Assembly: GCF_036588685.1 (NCBI RefSeq)
Contig: NC_086378.1
Coordinates: 83,018,001 to 83,082,000, forward strand
Length of the DNA: 64,000 nucleotides
Direction: 5' to 3'
DNA from: Mytilus trossulus
Lineage: Eukaryota
Below the pieces are notes generated by a model, which was not told the origin of the DNA, ran no database searches, and saw nothing but the letters and a program-made list of their open reading frames with translations. Shown here piece by piece: positions 41,501 through 57,226 of this stretch. The translations under genes and the position numbers were made by a program. Each line of letters opens with the position of its first letter. The first letter of the stretch is position 1.

Positions 41501-42542
41501 CAACCTTCAGATGGTTGACGTCATGTTGGCTATTTGTGAAAAATAAGTAAAGATCACTGCAACAGATTAAGTTCGAAGGTAGAGTCACTGTTATTTTGTG
41601 TATTGTCATTTATTCAATTATGTCTATTTTGCATATTGTTTTTGCAGATTTATTATGTTCATTTTTTAATTTATTTTTAATTTTTTATGATGAGGGTGTT
41701 TATATTATACCAAGCAACACTAAGAACTAGCTAAAATAGTCATACGATTGCTTCGATGTGCATGCTCATATGTGTCATAAGTCGGACTTCACTTAGTCGT
41801 TTTTTTATTCCTTAGACATGATCTTATGATCTTTTATAGCTTACATGTAGTATGCAGAATGAGTTTTGCTTACTAGAATGCTTAAGTTGACCTGTAGTGG
41901 CCTTAAACTATACCATTTTGGTTATTAGATGGACAGTTGTCTCACAGGCTGCATACTTAATTTTATTTCATATCTCATCTTATATCTATAGTGATAAAGA
42001 AACATTTATCACTCTTAATTAAAAACAGAACCAGTAATAAACTTTGTTGTGTAATCTTACGTTTTTTGATTGAGTTAAGTCTGCCAATTGATATTTTATC
42101 GTGTGTTTTTCTATGTTGGGATGTTATGCTATTGTTTCAGGAAAAGGGAGAAGGTTTCAAATTGGATCCATTAAAACGTTTAATCCCGCTGCAAATATTT
42201 GCACCTGTCCTAAGTCAGGAATCTGATGTACAGTAGTTGTCGTTTGTTTATGTAATATATATGTGATTCTCGTTTCTCGTTTTGTTTATATAGATTAGAC
42301 CGTTGGTTTTCCCGTTTGAATGGTTTTACACTAGTAATTTTGGGGCCCTTTATAGCGTGTTGTTCGGTGTGAGCCAAGTCTCCGTGTTGAAGGCCGTACT
42401 TTAACCTATAATGGTTTACTTTTTAAATTGATATTTGCATGGAGAGTTGTTTCATTGGCACTCACACCACATCTTCCTATATCTATTTGATGATTTATAT
42501 AGAAATGGAATTTAATTGTTGTTATCTTTATTTTTCAGACAA

Positions 42543-43748
42543 ATGGATTCCACTTTCTATGATGACTACAATATTTCACAGATTTTATTGGAAATGCTTA
42601 TGCAAAATCAAAACATATCAAATGAAGCTTTAATTGCGCATGCCCAGCTACTTTATAAACAGCTCACGTTTGAAAGAGACCTTTCATCTTACACAGAATT
42701 TAGACTTCACAAAGCAATGTTACTCTACGTGCCACCTATACTTTTGGTGTTAGGAGTGATCGGAAATGTTTTATCATTCTTTATTTTACGACATAAAACA
42801 ATGACAAGGCAGTCTACAACTTTATTTCTGGCAGTTCTTTCGATAGCAGATTCGTTGGTTCTATTTATAGGACTTTTTCGGAAATGGATTGGGGAAATAA
42901 CTGGCCTTGACATTCAGCATGAATCGATGTTTTTATGCAAGACAATAACAGTATTGGGATACAGCATTAGTCACTACTCTGTGTGGCTGATTGTTGCAGT
43001 AACGATAGAACGATTTATCGTCGTGTGTAGACCTCTCCAAGCTTCTAGATATTGTAAACAAAAGAGAGCACGAAAAGTGGTGCTTGTCATGATTTTCATT
43101 TTTCTAGCCATTAATGCTCATTTGTTTTGGACTGTCGAACTTACAGAACAAAGTATGAACAGAAAAACAGTTCTCAGGTGTGATGCTGGACCAAAATTTG
43201 TTGAGTTCATTGACCGAATTTGGCCATGGATCGATTTGGTTTTATATTCATTGTTCCCTTTAGTTATATTGTTATTTTTTAACACACATATAATAAGACA
43301 GGTTGTGAGAGCGACAGCAGGAAGAGATATATTACAAAACGGCCCATTAATGAAAGTAGATACGCGTAGGAATACAAAAGATGCAAATCTTAAACTGACA
43401 ATTATGTTATTAACCATATCATTCACATTTCTTGCAACAACGGTACCAATGAATGTAGTAATGATCGCTTCGGTGGTCTGGAGAAATGAAATGGATAATC
43501 CAAAGCAATTTGCCAAATTAGTACTAATACGAACAATATCGGAATTACTGATGTATCTCAATCATTCAATAAATTTCTTTTTGTATTGTGCAACAGGACA
43601 GAAGTTTAGAAACATTGTGTTAAGAATGATTTGTGGTCGATCAACATCAAATATTTCTAATTTTTCAGATCATAGTCAGCATCTATATTGTTCAAGAGCT
43701 AACAACAATTGTAATGGTCACAAGAGTGAGAATGAAACGGCATTTTGA
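42543..43748 (+). CDS. Rhodopsin-like (class A) GPCR, FMRFamide/sex-peptide-receptor-like peptide receptor family, 401 aa in this exon
   Basis: Seven hydrophobic segments; TM1 GVIGN, TM2 LSIAD, Cys at the start of TM3, ERF in place of DRY, an ECL2 Cys, TM5 Pro, TM6 TTVP, TM7 NHSINFFLY and helix 8 KFR. A tttttcag acceptor ends at 42538, just before the ATG at 42543. The TTG start at 42516 in the ORF track is probably intronic. Confidence 0.95.
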   Translation: MDSTFYDDYNISQILLEMLMQNQNISNEALIAHAQLLYKQLTFERDLSSYTEFRLHKAMLLYVPPILLVLGVIGNVLSFFILRHKTMTRQSTTLFLAVLSIADSLVLFIGLFRKWIGEITGLDIQHESMFLCKTITVLGYSISHYSVWLIVAVTIERFIVVCRPLQASRYCKQKRARKVVLVMIFIFLAINAHLFWTVELTEQSMNRKTVLRCDAGPKFVEFIDRIWPWIDLVLYSLFPLVILLFFNTHIIRQVVRATAGRDILQNGPLMKVDTRRNTKDANLKLTIMLLTISFTFLATTVPMNVVMIASVVWRNEMDNPKQFAKLVLIRTISELLMYLNHSINFFLYCATGQKFRNIVLRMICGRSTSNISNFSDHSQHLYCSRANNNCNGHKSENETAF

Positions 43749-44985: not shown

Positions 44986-45504
44986 TCCGTGCATTAACTC
45001 ATAAACCGTTCAACCAAAGCTTTTAAATTTTAATAATTTGTTACTGTCAACTAAAGGAAGGTCGAGTTCAATAATGGCGATTTTGACTTTTACCGTTCAG
45101 GAGTTATGGTTCTTGAAAGATTGAAAAATGGAGTTTTCAGTCGTGTCCGTGCATTAACACTAGAACTGTTCTACCAAAGCACCCCAAATTTTAATATGTT
45201 ATTACCGATGACAAAATGGAGGTCAAGTTCAATAATGACGATTTTGACTTGTATCGTTCAGGAGTTATGGTTCTTGAAAGATTGAAAAATGGTGTTTCCA
45301 TTCACGTTGTTGCATTTACTCATGAACCGTTCAATCTAAGCTTTTCAAATTTAAATATGTTGATACTGACTACAAAATCGAGGTCAAATTTGATATTGAC
45401 GATTATCATTTTCACCATTCATCAGTAATGGTTCTTGTGATATTGCCAGGACACAAATAAATGTTAATAAATCCGGTTTGCTGTCTTTCTGACAGCCTCT
45501 TGTT
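44986..45504 (+). repeat. Three ~160-bp tandem units ending in a Helentron/HINE-type 3' stem-loop
   Basis: The unit landmark gcatt occurs at 44991, 45151 and 45312. The terminus is gctgtc-tttct-gacagc-ctcttgtt. Confidence 0.75.
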
Positions 45505-51163: not shown

Positions 51164-51763
51164 TGTTACGGCCAGAAATCGCCTTTAAATTGTAGCCAAC
51201 AAAAGACACAAATCAATAGTAAAATTTAACAATATTTATTATACAAAAGTTTAAAAGAAGTTTTACACAAATATTACTGTCAACTTAACTGTCAAAATAT
51301 GAGTCCACTCTTTTATCTGTATTCGGAAATCTTTCGGAATCCAATCTGAATATTATGTTCACTACTAAGGTCACAATCTAGTATGATGTTGTTTGTAGAA
51401 TAAAAGTGTCAATCCAAGTGCTGTGAATACTAATGTCTATCACTGTCTATGTCCAAGTTTAATTATATGAGAGTTTAACTTTAGTGTCTGTATATATATA
51501 GTTGTGACGGATTATTCTAGAACACGCTAGAACGGAACATTGTGGAAAATCCTGGAAAGTTACAACGGAAGTTTCTGGAATAACGTAGAAGTTTAAATTA
51601 CGCATCTTTTATAAGGATTATTCTAGAAAGTTCTAATCATTCTGTGATTGTTCCAGTGATTCCTAAACTGCACAGTTATAAGATTATTTGGTAAACAACT
51701 ATCAGGCCATACAACACAAATTAGGCCAACATAAATAAACATAATAATTACCATATCATAACA
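51164..51763 (-). repeat. 3' LTR (600 bp)
   Basis: TGTTA...TAACA termini. No differences from 56627-57226 were found by eye. A minus-strand AATAAA lies at 51235-51240. Confidence 0.97.
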
Positions 51764-51776
51764 CCTCCCCCCTTAA
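51764..51776 (-). promoter_or_regulatory. Polypurine tract
   Basis: The minus strand reads ttAAGGGGGGAGG directly abutting the 3' LTR. Confidence 0.9.
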
Positions 51777-51847
51777 AAGAAGTTTTAGTGTAACAAAAAC
51801 TTATCATGAATAATATGAACAAAAATACATAATATATACAAAGTGAT

Positions 51848-53740
51848 TTAATAAGCTCTAGATAAAGCATCAGCTATTACATTATCTTTACCCTTAATAT
51901 GTTTTACAATTACATCATATTCCTGTAACAATAAACTCCACTTAGTCAATCTCTGATTCTTGTTTCTCATTTTATGCATGAAGGTGAGAGGATTATGATC
52001 AGTATAAACAAGAATAGGATGCACAGTTGGATTCAAATATACATCAAAATGTTGAAGTGCTGACAACATTGCAAAACACTCTTTTTCAATAGTTGAATAA
52101 TTTTTCTGATGTTTATCTAATTTCTTAGAAAAATATGATATAGGTTTTTCAACATTATCATCTGTCTCTTGATATAAAACAGCTCCTATTACTACATCGC
52201 TTGCATCAACGGCAAGTTTAAATTGTTTTTCAAAGTCTGGAGTAATCAGAACTGGACTATTAATTAAAAGTGCTTTGCTATTTTCAAAAGCTTTTTGACA
52301 ATTTTCACTCCAGATAAATTTAGAGTCTTTTCGTAAAAGATGAGTCAATGGTTGAACAACAGTAGCAAAATTTGAACAAAATTTCCTGTAAAATCCAATC
52401 ATGCCTAAATATCTCATAAGTTGTTTTCTATTTGTAGGAGGAGGAAATTTGGAAATAGCTTCCACTTTAGCCATTATAGGTTTTACTTGACCTTGGCCAA
52501 CTGTATGCCCTAAATAATCAACAGTGGCCTGACAAAATTCACTTTTACCAAGATTAACAGTCAAATTTGATTTTGACAATCTATCAAAAGTATCATACAA
52601 ATGTGTTAAATGCTGTTCCCAGCTATCACTACATACAATAAGATCATCAATATAAGCATAACAACAGTCTAAATCTTTTATAACATTATTGATCATTCTT
52701 TGAAATGTAGCTGGAGCACTTTTCATGCCAAATGGCATTACAGTATATTGAAATAAGCCATCTGGTGTAACAAAAGCTGATATTTCACGAGCTCTCTGTG
52801 TCAATGGAACTTGCCAATAACCTTTCAATAAATCAAATTTGCTCACAAATTTTGCTTGACCAATATTGTCAATACAATCGTCTATCCTTGGAATCGGATA
52901 GGAATCAGATTTTGAGACTGAATTTACTTTTCTGAAATCAGTCACGAAACGAAAAGTTTTATCTGGTTTTGGCACAAGTAGACAAGGAGAGCTCCATTCA
53001 CTGTTACTCGGCTCAATAATATCATTGTCAAGCATATATTTAATTTCTTTTCTCATAACTTCAAGTTTGAGTGGATTGAGCCTGTAAGGATGTTGCTTAA
53101 TTGGAGAAGCATCTCCTACATCAACATCATGACAAACAGCAGTGGTTTTGTTTGGCACATCAGGAAAAAGATTTTTAAAAGAAAATACCAAAGTTTTTAT
53201 TTCTTCTCTTCGATCAAAAGACAGATGTGCAAGTTTTGAATCTAAATTTGACAAAATTTCTGAATTTTTCAATCTAACTGTCTCTTCCATAGTTTTACAA
53301 CTAAAAGTTGGTTCAATTACATCTGGTTTGTCATGATTGTTCTCAAAGTTAACCATGCCTAAAGTGGCAACTGGTTTACTATCACATACATTAGTACGCT
53401 CAAAATATGGTTTTAACAAATTAATATGACACACTCTATTTTGTTTGCGCCGACCTGGAGTTTTTACAATATAATTCAAATCATTAATTTTACTCTCTAT
53501 TGTATAAGGACCACAATATTTAGCCTGTAAAGGATGTCCAGGGACTGGCAAAAATACAAGTACCTTATCACCAGGCTCAAAAACTCTGTCCCTGGCAGCT
53601 TTATCATACCATATTTTCATCTTGTTCTGTACATTTTTTAAGTTTTTCTGAGCAATTTGACAAGCAGTATACAATTTTTCTTTAAATCTAGATACATAGT
53701 CTAAAAGATTCAAGTCAGTATGTTCAGTAAGCCACTTTTC
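51848..53740 (-). CDS. pol: Pol C-terminal segment: integrase GPY/F tail, reverse transcriptase and RNase H
   Basis: KYCGPY; PIKQHPYR, DFRKVN, FDLLKGYWQVPL, MPFG and YIDD; RNase H DAS, NYSTIEKE, TDH and ADALSR. It joins the upstream ORF across a 1-nt deletion near 53741. Confidence 0.93.
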   Translation of the reverse strand, partial: EKWLTEHTDLNLLDYVSRFKEKLYTACQIAQKNLKNVQNKMKIWYDKAARDRVFEPGDKVLVFLPVPGHPLQAKYCGPYTIESKINDLNYIVKTPGRRKQNRVCHINLLKPYFERTNVCDSKPVATLGMVNFENNHDKPDVIEPTFSCKTMEETVRLKNSEILSNLDSKLAHLSFDRREEIKTLVFSFKNLFPDVPNKTTAVCHDVDVGDASPIKQHPYRLNPLKLEVMRKEIKYMLDNDIIEPSNSEWSSPCLLVPKPDKTFRFVTDFRKVNSVSKSDSYPIPRIDDCIDNIGQAKFVSKFDLLKGYWQVPLTQRAREISAFVTPDGLFQYTVMPFGMKSAPATFQRMINNVIKDLDCCYAYIDDLIVCSDSWEQHLTHLYDTFDRLSKSNLTVNLGKSEFCQATVDYLGHTVGQGQVKPIMAKVEAISKFPPPTNRKQLMRYLGMIGFYRKFCSNFATVVQPLTHLLRKDSKFIWSENCQKAFENSKALLINSPVLITPDFEKQFKLAVDASDVVIGAVLYQETDDNVEKPISYFSKKLDKHQKNYSTIEKECFAMLSALQHFDVYLNPTVHPILVYTDHNPLTFMHKMRNKNQRLTKWSLLLQEYDVIVKHIKGKDNVIADALSRAY

Positions 53741-56070
53741 TTAATCAATTTTAACGGTCCCCTTACAGTATGACCAAATACCAACTCAAAGGGACTAAAT
53801 CCAAGGGATTCTTGAACAGCCTCTCGAACCGCAAAAAGTAGAAAGTGAACTCCATCATCCCAGTCTCTGTCAAATTGAAGACAGAAAGTTCTAATCATGT
53901 TCTTCAATGTTTGATGAAAACGTTCTAAGGCACCTTGAGATTCTGGATGATAAGCACTTGATCTGTACTGAGCAATCCCTAACTGGTATACGACTTGCTG
54001 AAATAAACCTGACATGAAATTTGATCCCTGGTCGGACTGTATAGACTTAGGAAGTCCTACTAATGTGAAAAATTTGATCAAAGCTTTGACGATAGTAGGT
54101 GTCTTGATATTTCTGAGCGGAATAGCTTCAGGAAAGCGGGTAGATGTACACATGATTGTCAATAAATATGCATTTCCGGTCTTGGTCTTTGGTAAAGGTC
54201 CAACGCAGTCAATTAGAACTCTGCTGAAAGGTTCGTCAAAGGCTGGAATAGGCAGAAGTGGTGCTGGTGGTATTTTCTGGTTAGGCTTACCAACAACCTG
54301 GCATATATGACATGATTTGCAGTATTCTGCGACATCATTTCTAAGTCTGGGCCAGTAGAAATGCTGTAAGATCTTAAGGCAAGTCTTCCTTATACCTAAG
54401 TGTCCAGCCAAGGGGGTGTCATGGGCAAGACCAATAATTTCTTGCCGATAAACTTTAGGCACCATAACTTGGTATACCACTCTCCATTCCTCCTCTGGGG
54501 TAGCATCAGGAGGCCTCCACTTCCTCATTAAAATGCCGTCCTGATGGTAATAGCATTCGGCCACTTTGTCTGCTTCGTCCTGTGGTTGAGCTCTCAGGCT
54601 GAGCTGGAGAACCTCAGGGTCTTTATGTTGTTCTTCAGATAAATTCTTTCGGTCTAATGAATGGCTGTTAACGTCTAGCCATGGCATAATAACATTCTTG
54701 TTAACACTAGGTGGTTTTATAATGGCCTTTTCTGAGTTACCAGGATCTTCAATATCAGCTATAAAAGTGTCAGAAAGGTCCATGTAATCAAATTTGTCTT
54801 CTTTCAAATTATCATCTTGTTGTTTTCTAGCCATCGCCCTAGTAACAACACAAGCTGGATACAATTCAGCAGCATTTTCAGGTGATTTGACATCCACCAC
54901 CGGTTCACTGGTAACAATTGGTTCAGCAACCACTTTGTTCCTAGCTAGATCATTTCCTAGCAATAATGTAACACCCTCAACAGGGAGATTAGGACGAACA
55001 CCTGCAACAACTGGTCCAGTTACCAAATCTGACTTCAGATAAATTCGATGGAGAGGAACATCTATACAACCCAACTCTACACCTTGTAATAAAACGGAGG
55101 CACCAACAGAAGTCTTCTCGGACAAAGGCAACACACCTTCTAACAATAAAGACTGAGAAGCTCCAGTGTCCCGTAAAATCTTAATAGGCTGAAGAGTGGT
55201 ATCATCAACAATAGCAACAAACCCATCAGACATAAAGGGTTTGTATTCCTCCATATAATCACAAAAACTGGACTTAAAAGCCTGACTCGCAGGACATTCC
55301 AATGTACTGGTAATATAAGGTGTCGTACAAGCACTGGTCTTCGGCTTATTATCTCGTTCATTCTTCTTCTGGAGTCTAAAACAATCAGCCATCAGGTGAC
55401 CAATCTTCTTACAATAAGCACAAGTCAGTGACTTCTTCTCAAAAGTATCAAATTTTGGACTAGACATATTATAACTGGACTGACTCTTATTCTGTGCAAC
55501 AGGCTTACTATCAGTACGCTCATTGCTTTGATTTTTGTAATTTCCACTGGAAGTATTGACATTTTGACCCTTGAAACTTCTTTTATGTGAAAGAGTATAA
55601 TTATCTGAAATGACAGCTGCATCATGTATTGACTCAACAGTTTTGTCGTCGTCTAAATGTGTTTTTAAGTCTAAATGAACACATAGTTTGAACTCTTTTA
55701 ATAATATCAATTGTCTTAGGTTATCAAAATTGTTATCTGTTTTCTTTGACGTAAGCCATTTGTCTAATAGATCTTCTTTTTCCCGAGCAAATTCCACATA
55801 TGTTTGTGAATCAAACTTTTTATACGATCTAAATTTCTGTCTATATGCTTCTGGTACTAGCTCATAGGCTTTCAAAACTTCCTGTTTCACCGTGTCATAA
55901 TCAGAACTTTTTTCTGATGGAAGTGCAGAGTATATTTCAGCGGCCTTGCCCTCAAAAACACTTTGCAGCATCGTAGTCCAATATGGCTTTGGCCATTTCA
56001 AATTATTAGCAATTTTCTCAAACTGTGGAAAATATTTATCAACTGTTTTTTCAAAAAATTTCGGAACCAA
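53710..56070 (-). CDS. Gag C-terminus (SCAN-like capsid, CCHC knuckle), aspartic protease and integrase core
   Basis: PEAYRQKFR...LRQLIL; CAYCKKIGHLMADC; LRDTGASQS; HHCC (AHD...GHLG...CKSCHIC); DDE triad in IDCVGPLP, SDQGSNF and LERFHQ. Confidence 0.93.
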   Translation of the reverse strand: MVPKFFEKTVDKYFPQFEKIANNLKWPKPYWTTMLQSVFEGKAAEIYSALPSEKSSDYDTVKQEVLKAYELVPEAYRQKFRSYKKFDSQTYVEFAREKEDLLDKWLTSKKTDNNFDNLRQLILLKEFKLCVHLDLKTHLDDDKTVESIHDAAVISDNYTLSHKRSFKGQNVNTSSGNYKNQSNERTDSKPVAQNKSQSSYNMSSPKFDTFEKKSLTCAYCKKIGHLMADCFRLQKKNERDNKPKTSACTTPYITSTLECPASQAFKSSFCDYMEEYKPFMSDGFVAIVDDTTLQPIKILRDTGASQSLLLEGVLPLSEKTSVGASVLLQGVELGCIDVPLHRIYLKSDLVTGPVVAGVRPNLPVEGVTLLLGNDLARNKVVAEPIVTSEPVVDVKSPENAAELYPACVVTRAMARKQQDDNLKEDKFDYMDLSDTFIADIEDPGNSEKAIIKPPSVNKNVIMPWLDVNSHSLDRKNLSEEQHKDPEVLQLSLRAQPQDEADKVAECYYHQDGILMRKWRPPDATPEEEWRVVYQVMVPKVYRQEIIGLAHDTPLAGHLGIRKTCLKILQHFYWPRLRNDVAEYCKSCHICQVVGKPNQKIPPAPLLPIPAFDEPFSRVLIDCVGPLPKTKTGNAYLLTIMCTSTRFPEAIPLRNIKTPTIVKALIKFFTLVGLPKSIQSDQGSNFMSGLFQQVVYQLGIAQYRSSAYHPESQGALERFHQTLKNMIRTFCLQFDRDWDDGVHFLLFAVREAVQESLGFSPFELVFGHTVRGPLKLIKKSGLLNILT

Positions 56071-56533
56071 AAATTATGTTTTTTGCTGCATCAAAATAAT
56101 CTGATTTTGACTGGACTTTAGTGTTGCTTTCTTCTTTGACCATTTCAATTTTCAGTTTTTCCATCTCTAGCCTTTCTCTCATTTCAAGTTCTTTTAATTT
56201 AAATTCATCTTCTTTTTCTTTTTTCTCCATTTCTAACCTTTCCTTCATTTCCAATTCTGCTTGCAATTGTTTTAATTTAAATTCATGGTCTAATTCAAGC
56301 TGTTTTAATTTAAAGGCATCAACATGTTCGACCTTAAGATCAAGAGCCTCTTCACCTAAAATTTCTTCGTCAACTAATTTGTCTATAACCACATTTTTTA
56401 TAATTTGTTTTCTCATAGATACTTTAAAAACTAATTTCAGTTGTTTAGCAAGCAACACTAATTCCTCTTTCTTTAAATTATCAAAACTCTCCAGGTCTGG
56501 CGTTTTCAAAAATTTACCAGCATCAAATGCCAT
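56051..56533 (-). CDS. gag: Gag N-terminus (helical domain plus E/K-rich coiled coil), frameshifted from the rest
   Basis: ATG at 56533 lies downstream of the PBS. Removing one T from the T5 run at 56069-56073 fuses it to the next ORF (DAAKNIILVPKF). Confidence 0.85.
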   Translation of the reverse strand: MAFDAGKFLKTPDLESFDNLKKEELVLLAKQLKLVFKVSMRKQIIKNVVIDKLVDEEILGEEALDLKVEHVDAFKLKQLELDHEFKLKQLQAELEMKERLEMEKKEKEDEFKLKELEMRERLEMEKLKIEMVKEESNTKVQSKSDYFDAAKNIIFGSEIF

Positions 56534-56602
56534 TTTGTAGAATTTTGTTGGCTATTTATAATAAAAATATTAAACAAATTTTGACTAAAATATTTTTAAG
56601 AT

Positions 56603-56621
56603 ATCCCAGGACGAGCCCCCA
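56603..56621 (-). promoter_or_regulatory. Primer-binding site for tRNA-Pro
   Basis: The minus strand reads TGGGGGCTCGTCC(T)GGGAT, complementary to the tRNA-Pro 3' end (ATCCCGGACGAGCCCCCA) with one extra base. It lies 5 nt from the 5' LTR. Confidence 0.9.
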
Positions 56622-56626
56622 ATTTC

Positions 56627-57226
56627 TGTTACGGCCAGAAATCGCCTTTAAATTGTAGCCAACAAAAGACACAAATCAATAGTAAAATTTAACAATATTT
56701 ATTATACAAAAGTTTAAAAGAAGTTTTACACAAATATTACTGTCAACTTAACTGTCAAAATATGAGTCCACTCTTTTATCTGTATTCGGAAATCTTTCGG
56801 AATCCAATCTGAATATTATGTTCACTACTAAGGTCACAATCTAGTATGATGTTGTTTGTAGAATAAAAGTGTCAATCCAAGTGCTGTGAATACTAATGTC
56901 TATCACTGTCTATGTCCAAGTTTAATTATATGAGAGTTTAACTTTAGTGTCTGTATATATATAGTTGTGACGGATTATTCTAGAACACGCTAGAACGGAA
57001 CATTGTGGAAAATCCTGGAAAGTTACAACGGAAGTTTCTGGAATAACGTAGAAGTTTAAATTACGCATCTTTTATAAGGATTATTCTAGAAAGTTCTAAT
57101 CATTCTGTGATTGTTCCAGTGATTCCTAAACTGCACAGTTATAAGATTATTTGGTAAACAACTATCAGGCCATACAACACAAATTAGGCCAACATAAATA
57201 AACATAATAATTACCATATCATAACA
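56627..57226 (-). repeat. 5' LTR (600 bp)
   Basis: Adjacent to the PBS and identical to the 3' LTR. Confidence 0.97.
56954..57116 (-). promoter_or_regulatory. LTR promoter: TATA box (56954-56963) plus heat-shock element cluster (mirror copy at 51491-51653)
   Basis: Perfect GAAnnTTCnnGAA at 57031-57043 and TTCnnGAAnnTTC at 57084-57096. Also TTCnnGAA at 56978 and 10-bp-phased GAA at 56983/56993, 56998/57008/57018 and 57041/57051. Confidence 0.7.

What the first reader, a model, noticed from the sequence alone, without database searches (positions are those of the whole stretch)
56954..57116. Hsp70-like heat-shock promoter in the LTR of a newly inserted Gmr1-like retrotransposon
Seen: U3 has two perfect three-unit HSEs (GAAgtTTCtgGAA at 57031; TTCtaGAAagTTC at 57084) and further GAA/TTC units at 10-bp phasing. 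These include the degenerate array GAAcaTTGtgGAAaaTCCtgGAA and a repeated seed, ggattattctagaa. All lie about 15-150 bp upstream of TATATATA, with an Inr-like TCA ~30 nt downstream (56931-56933) and an AATAAA further on. Known: inverted nGAAn arrays bind HSF1, this layout resembles hsp70 promoters, and Arabidopsis ONSEN is a heat-activated LTR element that uses HSEs. Inference: this is an HSF1-driven, heat-inducible retrotransposon in a probable bivalve. I am not aware of that being described for Gmr1-like elements. Identical LTRs indicate recent family activity.
Basis: partly seen in the sequence, partly recalled or inferred. Interest (0 to 1): 0.85.

Follow-up and report, generated by a model that had tools for sequence, protein, structure and literature searches.

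The report
Heat-shock sites in a retrotransposon promoter
A young, abundant jumping gene in this animal genome has several textbook heat-shock-factor binding sites just upstream of its promoter's TATA box, so heat probably switches it on, although no heat data could be tested and the same trick is already known from a plant and a flatworm.

Summary
Window 51164-57226 (minus strand) is a 6063-bp LTR retrotransposon with identical 600-bp LTRs. Its domain order is gag-protease-integrase-RT-RNaseH, which is the Gmr1-like order.

**HSEs in this copy.** U3 holds two perfect trimeric heat-shock elements (HSEs), at 57084-57096 and 57031-57043. It also has a degenerate five-unit array and a two-unit site 10 nt upstream of TATATATA. 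Two perfect trimers occur in 2 of 10,000 dinucleotide shuffles.

**Enrichment.** Perfect trimers are about 270 times denser in LTR-homologous DNA than in 183 kb of other DNA I held.

**Family.** The family has about 300 or more LTRs, and most elements have identical LTR pairs. Of 48 LTRs chosen without regard to HSEs:
- 46 keep at least one perfect trimer.
- 36 keep at least two.
- 22 keep three, the third being the TATA-proximal site, which this copy's subfamily has weakened.

**Expression.** The family is transcribed in three RNA-seq runs. Strand, start site and heat response could not be read.

**Verdict.** It is probably an HSF-driven, stress-inducible LTR promoter (about 0.6), but induction is inferred, not shown. 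The novelty claim is out of date. A 2025 paper showed HSE-dependent heat induction of flatworm LTR retrotransposons, including a Gmr1/Osvaldo family. This is a new member of a known kind, and I found no bivalve report.

The parts
51164..57226 (-). Full-length LTR retrotransposon (6063 bp), Gmr1-like domain order
   Evidence: Identical LTRs 5463 bp apart; Pfam domains; possible ATAT target duplication
56627..57226 (-). 5' LTR (600 bp, TG..CA)
51164..51763 (-). 3' LTR, 100% identical to the 5' LTR; carries the same HSEs at 51621-51633 and 51568-51580
57084..57096 (-). Distal perfect trimeric HSE (sense GAActTTCtaGAA; LTR positions 131-143)
   Evidence: perfect in 35 of 48 HSE-blind family LTRs; several variants differ only at spacer letters
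57069..57076 (-). Upstream TATA-like box TATAAAAG (LTR 151-158); AATAAAAG in divergent subfamilies
57031..57043 (-). Second perfect trimeric HSE (sense TTCcaGAAacTTC; LTR 184-196); a further in-register TTC lies 10 nt upstream at LTR 174
   Evidence: perfect in 36 of 48 LTRs; first unit reads TAC in divergent subfamilies
56998..57020 (-). Degenerate five-unit array (sense TTCcaGGAttTTCcaCAAtgTTC; LTR 207-229): three perfect TTC units at 10-nt phasing
56973..56985 (-). TATA-proximal site (sense TTCtaGAAtaATC; LTR 242-254): two perfect units here, a perfect trimer (TTCtaGAAttTTC and spacer variants) in most of the family
   Evidence: perfect in 31 of 48 LTRs, and in 4 of the 5 most divergent ones
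56956..56963 (-). TATATATA box (LTR 264-271)
56931..56933 (-). Inr-like TCA, A 32 nt downstream of the first T of the TATA box; predicted, not mapped, start site
   Evidence: no read pile-up to confirm it
56698..56703 (-). AATAAA poly(A) signal candidate (LTR 524-529)
56603..56621 (-). Putative primer-binding site starting TGG, 5 nt after the 5' LTR
   Evidence: read from sequence; the tRNA was not identified
51764..51782 (-). Polypurine tract abutting the 3' LTR (sense ...AAGGGGGGAGG)
56051..56533 (-). ORF1, 160 aa, no Pfam match (probable gag N-terminal part), in a different frame from ORF2
53710..56070 (-). ORF2, 786 aa: capsid-like (SCAN) domain, CCHC knuckle (residue 217), protease motif DTGA (301), integrase zinc and core domains (537-709)
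51848..53713 (-). ORF3, 621 aa: integrase C-terminal domain, reverse transcriptase, RNase H. The frame changes between ORF2 and ORF3, inside integrase

Best explanation
The LTR of a young, high-copy Gmr1-like Ty3/Gypsy retrotransposon carries a cluster of canonical heat-shock elements 10-135 bp upstream of its TATA box. The most likely mechanism has four steps. Under heat or other proteotoxic stress, trimeric heat-shock factor (HSF1) binds these inverted nGAAn arrays in U3 of the 5' LTR. It recruits the transcription machinery to the TATA/Inr core. Genomic RNA synthesis starts about 30 nt after TATATATA. The element is therefore expressed when the host mounts its heat-shock response, as in ONSEN in Arabidopsis and the HSE-bearing LTR retrotransposons of Macrostomum lignano.

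Shown here: the motifs, their excess over chance, their persistence across the family, the recent activity of the family, and that the family is transcribed.

Inferred: HSF binding, the start site, and heat induction.

This window's copy belongs to a minority subfamily with two perfect trimers; most of the family has three. Its pol frame is interrupted inside integrase.
For: **Motifs and chance**
- There are two perfect trimers, a degenerate five-unit array and a two-unit proximal site, all upstream of TATA.
- P(2 or more perfect trimers) = 2e-4 in shuffles.
- Density is about 270-fold higher than in non-LTR DNA.
- The cluster is not a by-product of a tandem duplication.

**Family**
- A 22-mer just after the TATA box has 329 genome hits at 2 or fewer mismatches, against 4 control hits.
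- LTR pairs in 15 elements show 0-2 mismatches; one pair also differs by 6 nt in length. Differences between elements therefore arose in transposing lineages.

**HSE retention in 48 LTRs picked by an HSE-blind anchor**
- 22 have three perfect trimers, 14 have two, 10 have one and 2 have none.
- Which site is perfect changes between subfamilies. The proximal site is perfect in most and weakened here; the second site is weakened in the divergent ones.
- Many variants differ only at spacer letters.
- Parsimony steps per site are 1.37 for core triplets against 2.11 for other U3 sites (Mann-Whitney p = 0.008).
- Among the 30 closest LTRs, positions 95-262 have 3% variable columns, against 10-23% elsewhere.

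**Host and expression**
- The genome encodes HSF DNA-binding domains and a cluster of intronless hsp70 genes.
- The family is present in RNA-seq reads of three runs.

**Precedent**
- In M. lignano, four of six HSE-bearing LTR families, one of them Gmr1/Osvaldo, rose more than 250-fold on heat.
- HSE mutation abolished induction of the one LTR promoter tested, from a Mag family (PMC12801592).
Against: - No heat-versus-control data could be examined.
- The three raw-read runs show similar, modest levels. Reads lie in both orientations, about 2-3:1 in favour of first mate on the minus strand. Under the commonest stranded chemistry, that majority would be antisense to the element.
- Many LTR-edge reads run into heterogeneous flanks, which points to read-through or solo-LTR transcription. 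No start or poly(A) pile-up was seen.
- The core-versus-spacer contrast alone is not significant (p = 0.16), and the permutation test for cores against all U3 positions gives p = 0.06.
- Much of the conservation could reflect recent common ancestry.
- In M. lignano, two HSE-bearing families were not induced, so HSE presence does not guarantee induction.
- The anchor used to sample LTRs lies only about 20 nt from the proximal site. That may inflate the site's apparent conservation in very divergent LTRs.
Confidence: 0.6

Rival explanations
1. The HSE-like motifs are real sequence features but functionally idle in vivo. They persist because the family is young and copies share recent ancestry. 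The elements are kept silent (methylation, small RNAs) or are driven by other sites, so heat does not induce them.
For: - The copies sampled are mostly 90-99% identical.
- The core-versus-spacer difference is not significant.
- RNA reads lie on both strands and include read-through into flanks.
- Two HSE-bearing families in M. lignano were not heat-induced.
Against: - Two to three perfect trimers in one 170-nt stretch is far from chance.
- They persist, with turnover, in subfamilies down to about 60-85% LTR identity.
- The differences arose in lineages that were still transposing.
- The non-induced flatworm families had a single HSE.
Confidence: 0.22
2. The sites do bind HSF, but mainly for non-heat roles. 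These could be developmental or germline HSF activity, or other stresses typical of the animal's habitat (hypoxia, emersion, metals). Expression would then be tissue- or stage-specific rather than a classical heat response.
For: - The family is detectably transcribed at similar levels in three RNA runs of unknown condition.
- From general knowledge, HSF1 has developmental and germline targets, and germline expression is what a retrotransposon needs to spread.
Against: Perfect multi-trimer arrays next to a TATA box are the hallmark of classical inducible promoters. Nothing here points to a particular tissue.
Confidence: 0.1
3. The GAA/TTC-rich stretch is used by another factor family that reads overlapping words, such as ETS-type TTCC/GGAA or STAT-type TTCnnnGAA. 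The match to HSEs would then be incidental.
For: - Several units are embedded in TTCC/GGAA words.
- TTCCAGGAT in the degenerate array is one letter from a STAT-type palindrome.
Against: - The perfect sites have the 2-nt spacing specific to HSEs, not the 3-nt STAT spacing.
- The variants keep the GAA/TTC triplets at 5-nt register while the TTCC context changes, for example TTCta and TTCca.
Confidence: 0.05

Closest known systems
HSE-bearing LTR retrotransposons of Macrostomum lignano (Mlig-id115 Mag, Mlig-id36/55 CsRN1, Mlig-id38 Gmr1/Osvaldo; PMC12801592)
   Same: They are animal Ty3/Gypsy elements with one to four canonical trimeric HSEs in the LTR, upstream of the start site, in tens of copies. 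One family lies in the Gmr1/Osvaldo clade. The host is also intertidal.
   Different: - There, heat induction (more than 250-fold) and HSE necessity were shown by experiment. Here they are only inferred.
- The host phylum differs.
- This family is larger (about 300 LTRs) and has up to three perfect trimers plus degenerate arrays. The flatworm Gmr1/Osvaldo family has one.
- I did not test whether that flatworm family has integrase before RT.
ONSEN (ATCOPIA78) of Arabidopsis and other Brassicaceae
   Same: It is an LTR promoter with HSEs bound by heat-shock factor, and a young family with HSE gain and loss among copies (general knowledge, and as summarised in PMC12801592).
   Different: It is a Ty1/Copia element in a plant and uses HsfA2. 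There is no sequence relationship, so any likeness is convergent.
Gmr1 of Gadus morhua and Gmr1-like elements (Goodwin and Poulter; described in PMC6238403 and PMC8220671)
   Same: Gypsy-type RT, RNase H and integrase domains, with integrase upstream of RT.
   Different: Clade membership by RT phylogeny was not tested here. I found no report of HSEs for the original Gmr1.
Inducible hsp70 promoters (for example Drosophila hsp70; general knowledge)
   Same: Several trimeric HSEs lie within about 150 bp upstream of a TATA box, and the proximal one is centred about 45-50 nt before the predicted start.
   Different: The likeness is of layout only. Homology with the host's own hsp70 promoters could not be tested.
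Helitron1_CE of Caenorhabditis elegans (as cited in PMC12801592)
   Same: A transposon family that carries HSEs and spreads HSF-responsive sites through a genome.
   Different: It is a rolling-circle DNA transposon, not an LTR promoter.

Membership tests
LTR retrotransposon, Ty3/Gypsy superfamily | Direct LTRs with TG..CA ends, target-site duplication, primer-binding site and polypurine tract | tested here: met
   - The LTRs are 600/600 identical with TG..CA ends.
- The polypurine tract abuts the 3' LTR.
- A TGG-starting site lies 5 nt after the 5' LTR.
- The 4-bp ATAT duplication is only weak evidence because the flank is AT-repeat.
LTR retrotransposon, Ty3/Gypsy superfamily | Gypsy-type pol domains (RVT_1, RT_RNaseH, Integrase_H2C2 plus rve) | tested here: met
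   - Pfam E-values are 1e-35 (RVT_1), 7e-36 (RT_RNaseH), 2e-21 (Integrase_H2C2) and 6e-12 (rve).
- The protease is seen only as a DTGA motif, with no Pfam hit.
Gmr1-like clade | Integrase domain upstream of reverse transcriptase | tested here: met
   Integrase zinc and core domains lie in ORF2, residues 537-709. The integrase C-terminal domain, then RT, then RNase H lie in the downstream ORF3. The defining feature is as stated in PMC6238403 and PMC8220671.
Gmr1-like clade | RT/RNase H groups with Gmr1 in a phylogeny | not tested
   No reference Gmr1 sequences were fetched.
HSE-driven heat-inducible LTR retrotransposons (ONSEN-like mechanism) | Canonical nGAAnnTTCnnGAAn motif(s) in the LTR upstream of the transcription start | tested here: inconclusive
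   The motifs are present and upstream of both TATA-like boxes. The start site itself was not mapped.
HSE-driven heat-inducible LTR retrotransposons (ONSEN-like mechanism) | HSEs kept across family copies | tested here: met
   46 of 48 HSE-blind LTRs keep at least one perfect trimer and 36 of 48 keep at least two. Core triplets change less than other U3 sites.
HSE-driven heat-inducible LTR retrotransposons (ONSEN-like mechanism) | Transcript level rises on heat stress | not testable with these tools
   The runs are coded and their conditions unknown, and only one read-laying run was allowed.
HSE-driven heat-inducible LTR retrotransposons (ONSEN-like mechanism) | Heat-shock factor binds the sites, and the sites are necessary for induction | not testable with these tools
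   This needs ChIP or EMSA and a reporter assay. HSF DNA-binding domains are encoded in the genome.
hsp70-type promoter | Sequence homology with a host hsp70 promoter (promoter capture) | not tested

The most novel reading that the evidence does not exclude
The family is a currently transposing, heat-triggered retrotransposon of an intertidal animal. Natural heat episodes would drive bursts of its expression. Its roughly 300 LTRs would have seeded HSE-TATA modules across the genome, so that some now place neighbouring host genes under heat-shock control. This would be the first such case in a mollusc and a field-relevant link between warming and genome change.
Probability: 0.2. Interest if true: 0.7.

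Novelty: new member of a known kind. Interest (0 to 1): 0.45.

Why it matters
If heat induction is confirmed, this would be a third well-defined case of LTR retrotransposons adopting the heat-shock regulon, after a plant and a flatworm. That would strengthen the idea that this strategy evolves repeatedly.

The family is large and very young. It could therefore serve as a natural system for asking two questions:
- Do temperature episodes raise transposon activity in a wild marine animal?
- Do dispersed LTRs spread heat-responsive promoters to host genes?

As it stands, it is a well-supported prediction, not a demonstrated mechanism.

Tried and rejected
1. **Tandem-duplication origin of the HSE cluster.** Tandem Repeats Finder found nothing. 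Only short motif-level repeats exist. Rejected.
2. **Start site, poly(A) site and strand from RNA reads.** There was no pile-up in the LTR, and the library chemistry is unknown. The low depth in the LTR middle is explained by other subfamilies falling under the 95% likeness filter there. Inconclusive.
3. **Core-versus-spacer substitution contrast as a selection test.** The direction is as expected (1.37 against 2.67 steps per site), but p = 0.16. It is not used as proof.
4. **Comparison with host hsp70 promoters.** I did not try another route.
5. **The look-up of encoding contigs**, to learn the record name and organism.
6. **Earlier notes of this scan.** Nothing near the place or by words.
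7. **Literature on HSEs in bivalve or mollusc retrotransposons.** Five searches found no such report. This is absence from the searched library only.
8. **Protease by Pfam.** No hit even at E = 5. Only the DTGA motif was seen.

Copies were only compared.

Full report
**What is there**

Window 51164-57226 is a 6063-bp LTR retrotransposon on the minus strand.
- Its two 600-bp LTRs (51164-51763 and 56627-57226) are identical at every position.
- They begin TG and end CA and are flanked by ATAT on both sides. That target duplication is weak evidence because the flank is AT-repeat.
- A polypurine tract abuts the 3' LTR.
- A TGG-starting candidate primer-binding site lies 5 nt after the 5' LTR.
- Three ORFs fill the interior:
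  - ORF1 is a 160-aa ORF with no Pfam match.
  - ORF2 is 786 aa, with a capsid-like SCAN domain, a CCHC knuckle, a DTGA protease motif, and integrase zinc-binding and core domains.
  - ORF3 is 621 aa, with the integrase C-terminal domain, reverse transcriptase and RNase H.
- The domains are of the Ty3/Gypsy type, but integrase lies upstream of RT. That is the feature that defines Gmr1-like elements (PMC6238403 and PMC8220671).
- The reading frame changes between ORF1 and ORF2, and again inside integrase between ORF2 and ORF3.

**The observation**

I use sense coordinates, where LTR position i equals window 57227 minus i. U3 contains the following:

| Feature | Sense sequence | LTR position |
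|---|---|---|
| Distal perfect trimer | GAActTTCtaGAA | 131-143 |
| Upstream TATA-like box | TATAAAAG | 151 |
| In-register TTC | TTC | 174 |
| Second perfect trimer | TTCcaGAAacTTC | 184-196 |
| Degenerate five-unit array | TTCcaGGAttTTCcaCAAtgTTC | 207-229 |
| Proximal two-unit site | TTCtaGAAtaATC | 242-254 |
| TATA box | TATATATA | 264-271 |
| Inr-like TCA | TCA | 294-296 |
| Poly(A) signal candidate | AATAAA | 524 |

The excess over chance is clear.
- Perfect trimers average 0.006 per shuffled LTR. P(2 or more) is 2e-4 for the LTR and 5e-5 for the 170-nt core.
- The remaining ~58 kb of the window has two isolated trimers.
- 183 kb of non-LTR DNA in fetched loci also has two, which is 0.011 per kb against 2.93 per kb in LTR-homologous DNA.
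- No tandem duplication underlies the cluster.

**The family**

The window's genome is 1.30 Gb in 541 contigs, and every match listed lay on contigs C1-C14 apart from one on C36.
- A 22-mer just after the TATA box occurs 329 times at 2 or fewer mismatches, against 4 control hits. It occurs 516 times at 3 or fewer, against 88 control hits.
- Many hits come in pairs about 5.5 kb apart. The family therefore has about 300 LTRs and, by my rough count of pairs, on the order of a hundred full-length elements.
- In 15 elements the two LTRs show 0-2 mismatches out of about 598; one pair also differs by 6 nt in length. Different elements differ from each other by 2-10% or more.
- The family has therefore been transposing very recently from several diverged lineages. 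Differences between elements mostly arose in lineages that still had to transpose.

**Are the HSEs kept?**

- Among the 30 closest LTRs, positions 95-262 show 3% variable columns, against 10-23% in the other parts of the LTR.
- To avoid circularity, I sampled 48 further LTRs through the post-TATA anchor alone. Of these, 22 have three perfect trimers, 14 have two, 10 have one and 2 have none.
- Most of the family has a third perfect trimer at the TATA-proximal site, as TTCtaGAAttTTC with spacer variants ct, tc and TTCca. This window's subfamily has its third unit as ATC.
- The subfamily's version repeats the 14-nt word found at the distal HSE, which looks like a small sequence transfer between the two sites.
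- In divergent subfamilies (60-88% LTR identity):
  - The second HSE's first unit is TAC.
  - In some, the distal HSE is split by an insertion of about 22 nt.
  - The proximal one is usually still perfect.
- The array therefore persists while individual sites turn over.
- Several variants change only spacer letters.
- Parsimony steps per site, on a tree built from the rest of the LTR, are 1.37 for core triplets, 2.67 for spacers and 2.11 for other U3 sites.
  - Core against other U3 gives p = 0.008.
  - Core against spacer gives p = 0.16.
  - The permutation test gives p = 0.06.
- I read this as moderate, not decisive, evidence of constraint. The proximal site's closeness to the sampling anchor is a caveat.

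**Expression**

One run search and one read-laying run were allowed.
- Twenty runs from 12 studies hold parts of the element.
- In three raw-read RNA runs from 2026, 644-736 reads of about 7-9 million sampled records lay on the element. Most were 95-99% alike, so they come mainly from other copies.
- Reads lie in both orientations, about 2-3:1. I cannot assign the RNA strand without the library chemistry. Under the commonest chemistry the majority would be antisense.
- Many reads at the LTR edges continue into heterogeneous flanks, which fits read-through or solo-LTR transcription.
- No start or end pile-up was reported inside the LTR.
- The low depth in the LTR middle is largely a filter effect, because other copies are only 90-96% like this one there.
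- Nothing is known about temperature in these samples, so heat induction remains untested.

**Host side**

The genome encodes HSF DNA-binding domains and a cluster of intronless hsp70 genes on C14. 'Hsp70-like' therefore remains a resemblance of layout: several trimers within about 135 bp of a TATA box, with the proximal one centred about 45-50 nt before the predicted start.

**Comparison with what is known**

The closest precedent is the 2025 Mobile DNA paper on Macrostomum lignano (PMC12801592).
- Six of 137 LTR families had canonical HSEs.
- Four of those rose more than 250-fold at 37 °C: one Mag, two CsRN1 and one Gmr1/Osvaldo.
- Mutating the HSEs abolished induction of the one LTR promoter tested by reporter, from the Mag family.
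- Two single-HSE Copia families did not respond.
- The authors predicted more such cases across the tree of life.

ONSEN in Arabidopsis is the classical case. I found no report for bivalves or other molluscs in five searches. The organism itself was not verified.

**Verdict**

- The structural interpretation is supported: a Gmr1-like element, recently inserted, with an HSE cluster upstream of TATA.
- The functional interpretation is plausible at about 0.6 and untested.
- It is a new member of a known kind, of moderate interest.

Noticed in passing
window 53700-53745: This copy's pol frame changes inside integrase, at the ORF2/ORF3 boundary (53710-53713), even though its LTRs are identical. Most RNA reads from other family members differ in length by one letter close by (table 4). 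This young copy is therefore probably not autonomous. I describe this only.
   Followed up: partly
window 56040-56220: - ORF1 and ORF2 overlap in different frames at 56051-56070.
- Some reads differ in length by one letter at 56074.
- Reads and a contig carry 13-16 extra letters at a 'goes back 38' joint (56216/56198 to 56179).
- This points to length variation in the gag region among expressed copies.
   Followed up: no
window 52799-56369: Four reads in one run join 52799 to 56369, skipping 3569 nt, with 5 nt shared at the joint and non-canonical ends. This looks like an internally deleted family member rather than splicing.
   Followed up: no
window 56972-56985 and 57078-57091: The 14-nt word shared by the distal HSE and the TATA-proximal site is specific to this copy's subfamily. 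Most of the family has a different, perfect trimer at the proximal site, with about five clustered differences. That suggests a short sequence transfer between the two sites.
   Followed up: partly
window 42516-43748 (+): A single-exon 410-aa ORF encodes a rhodopsin-family 7TM receptor (Pfam 7tm_1, E = 5e-25), about 7.4 kb from the element.
   Followed up: partly
window 44986-45437: A 161-bp tandem repeat, 2.8 copies, 77% matches.
   Followed up: no
G000:C5:9442221, 9447686, 9453151 (anchor positions): Three family LTRs lie at equal spacing of about 5465 bp. This suggests two elements in tandem sharing a middle LTR.
   Followed up: no
G000:C14:43.76-43.79 Mb, 54.19-54.21 Mb and 57.93 Mb: There are several intronless full-length hsp70 genes (open frames of 600-647 aa), some in divergent pairs, plus broken copies. 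Their promoters were not read.
   Followed up: no
L018 (G000:C8:32627982-32628766): One family LTR is followed directly by a second copy of its first 193 nt, a partial LTR duplication.
   Followed up: no
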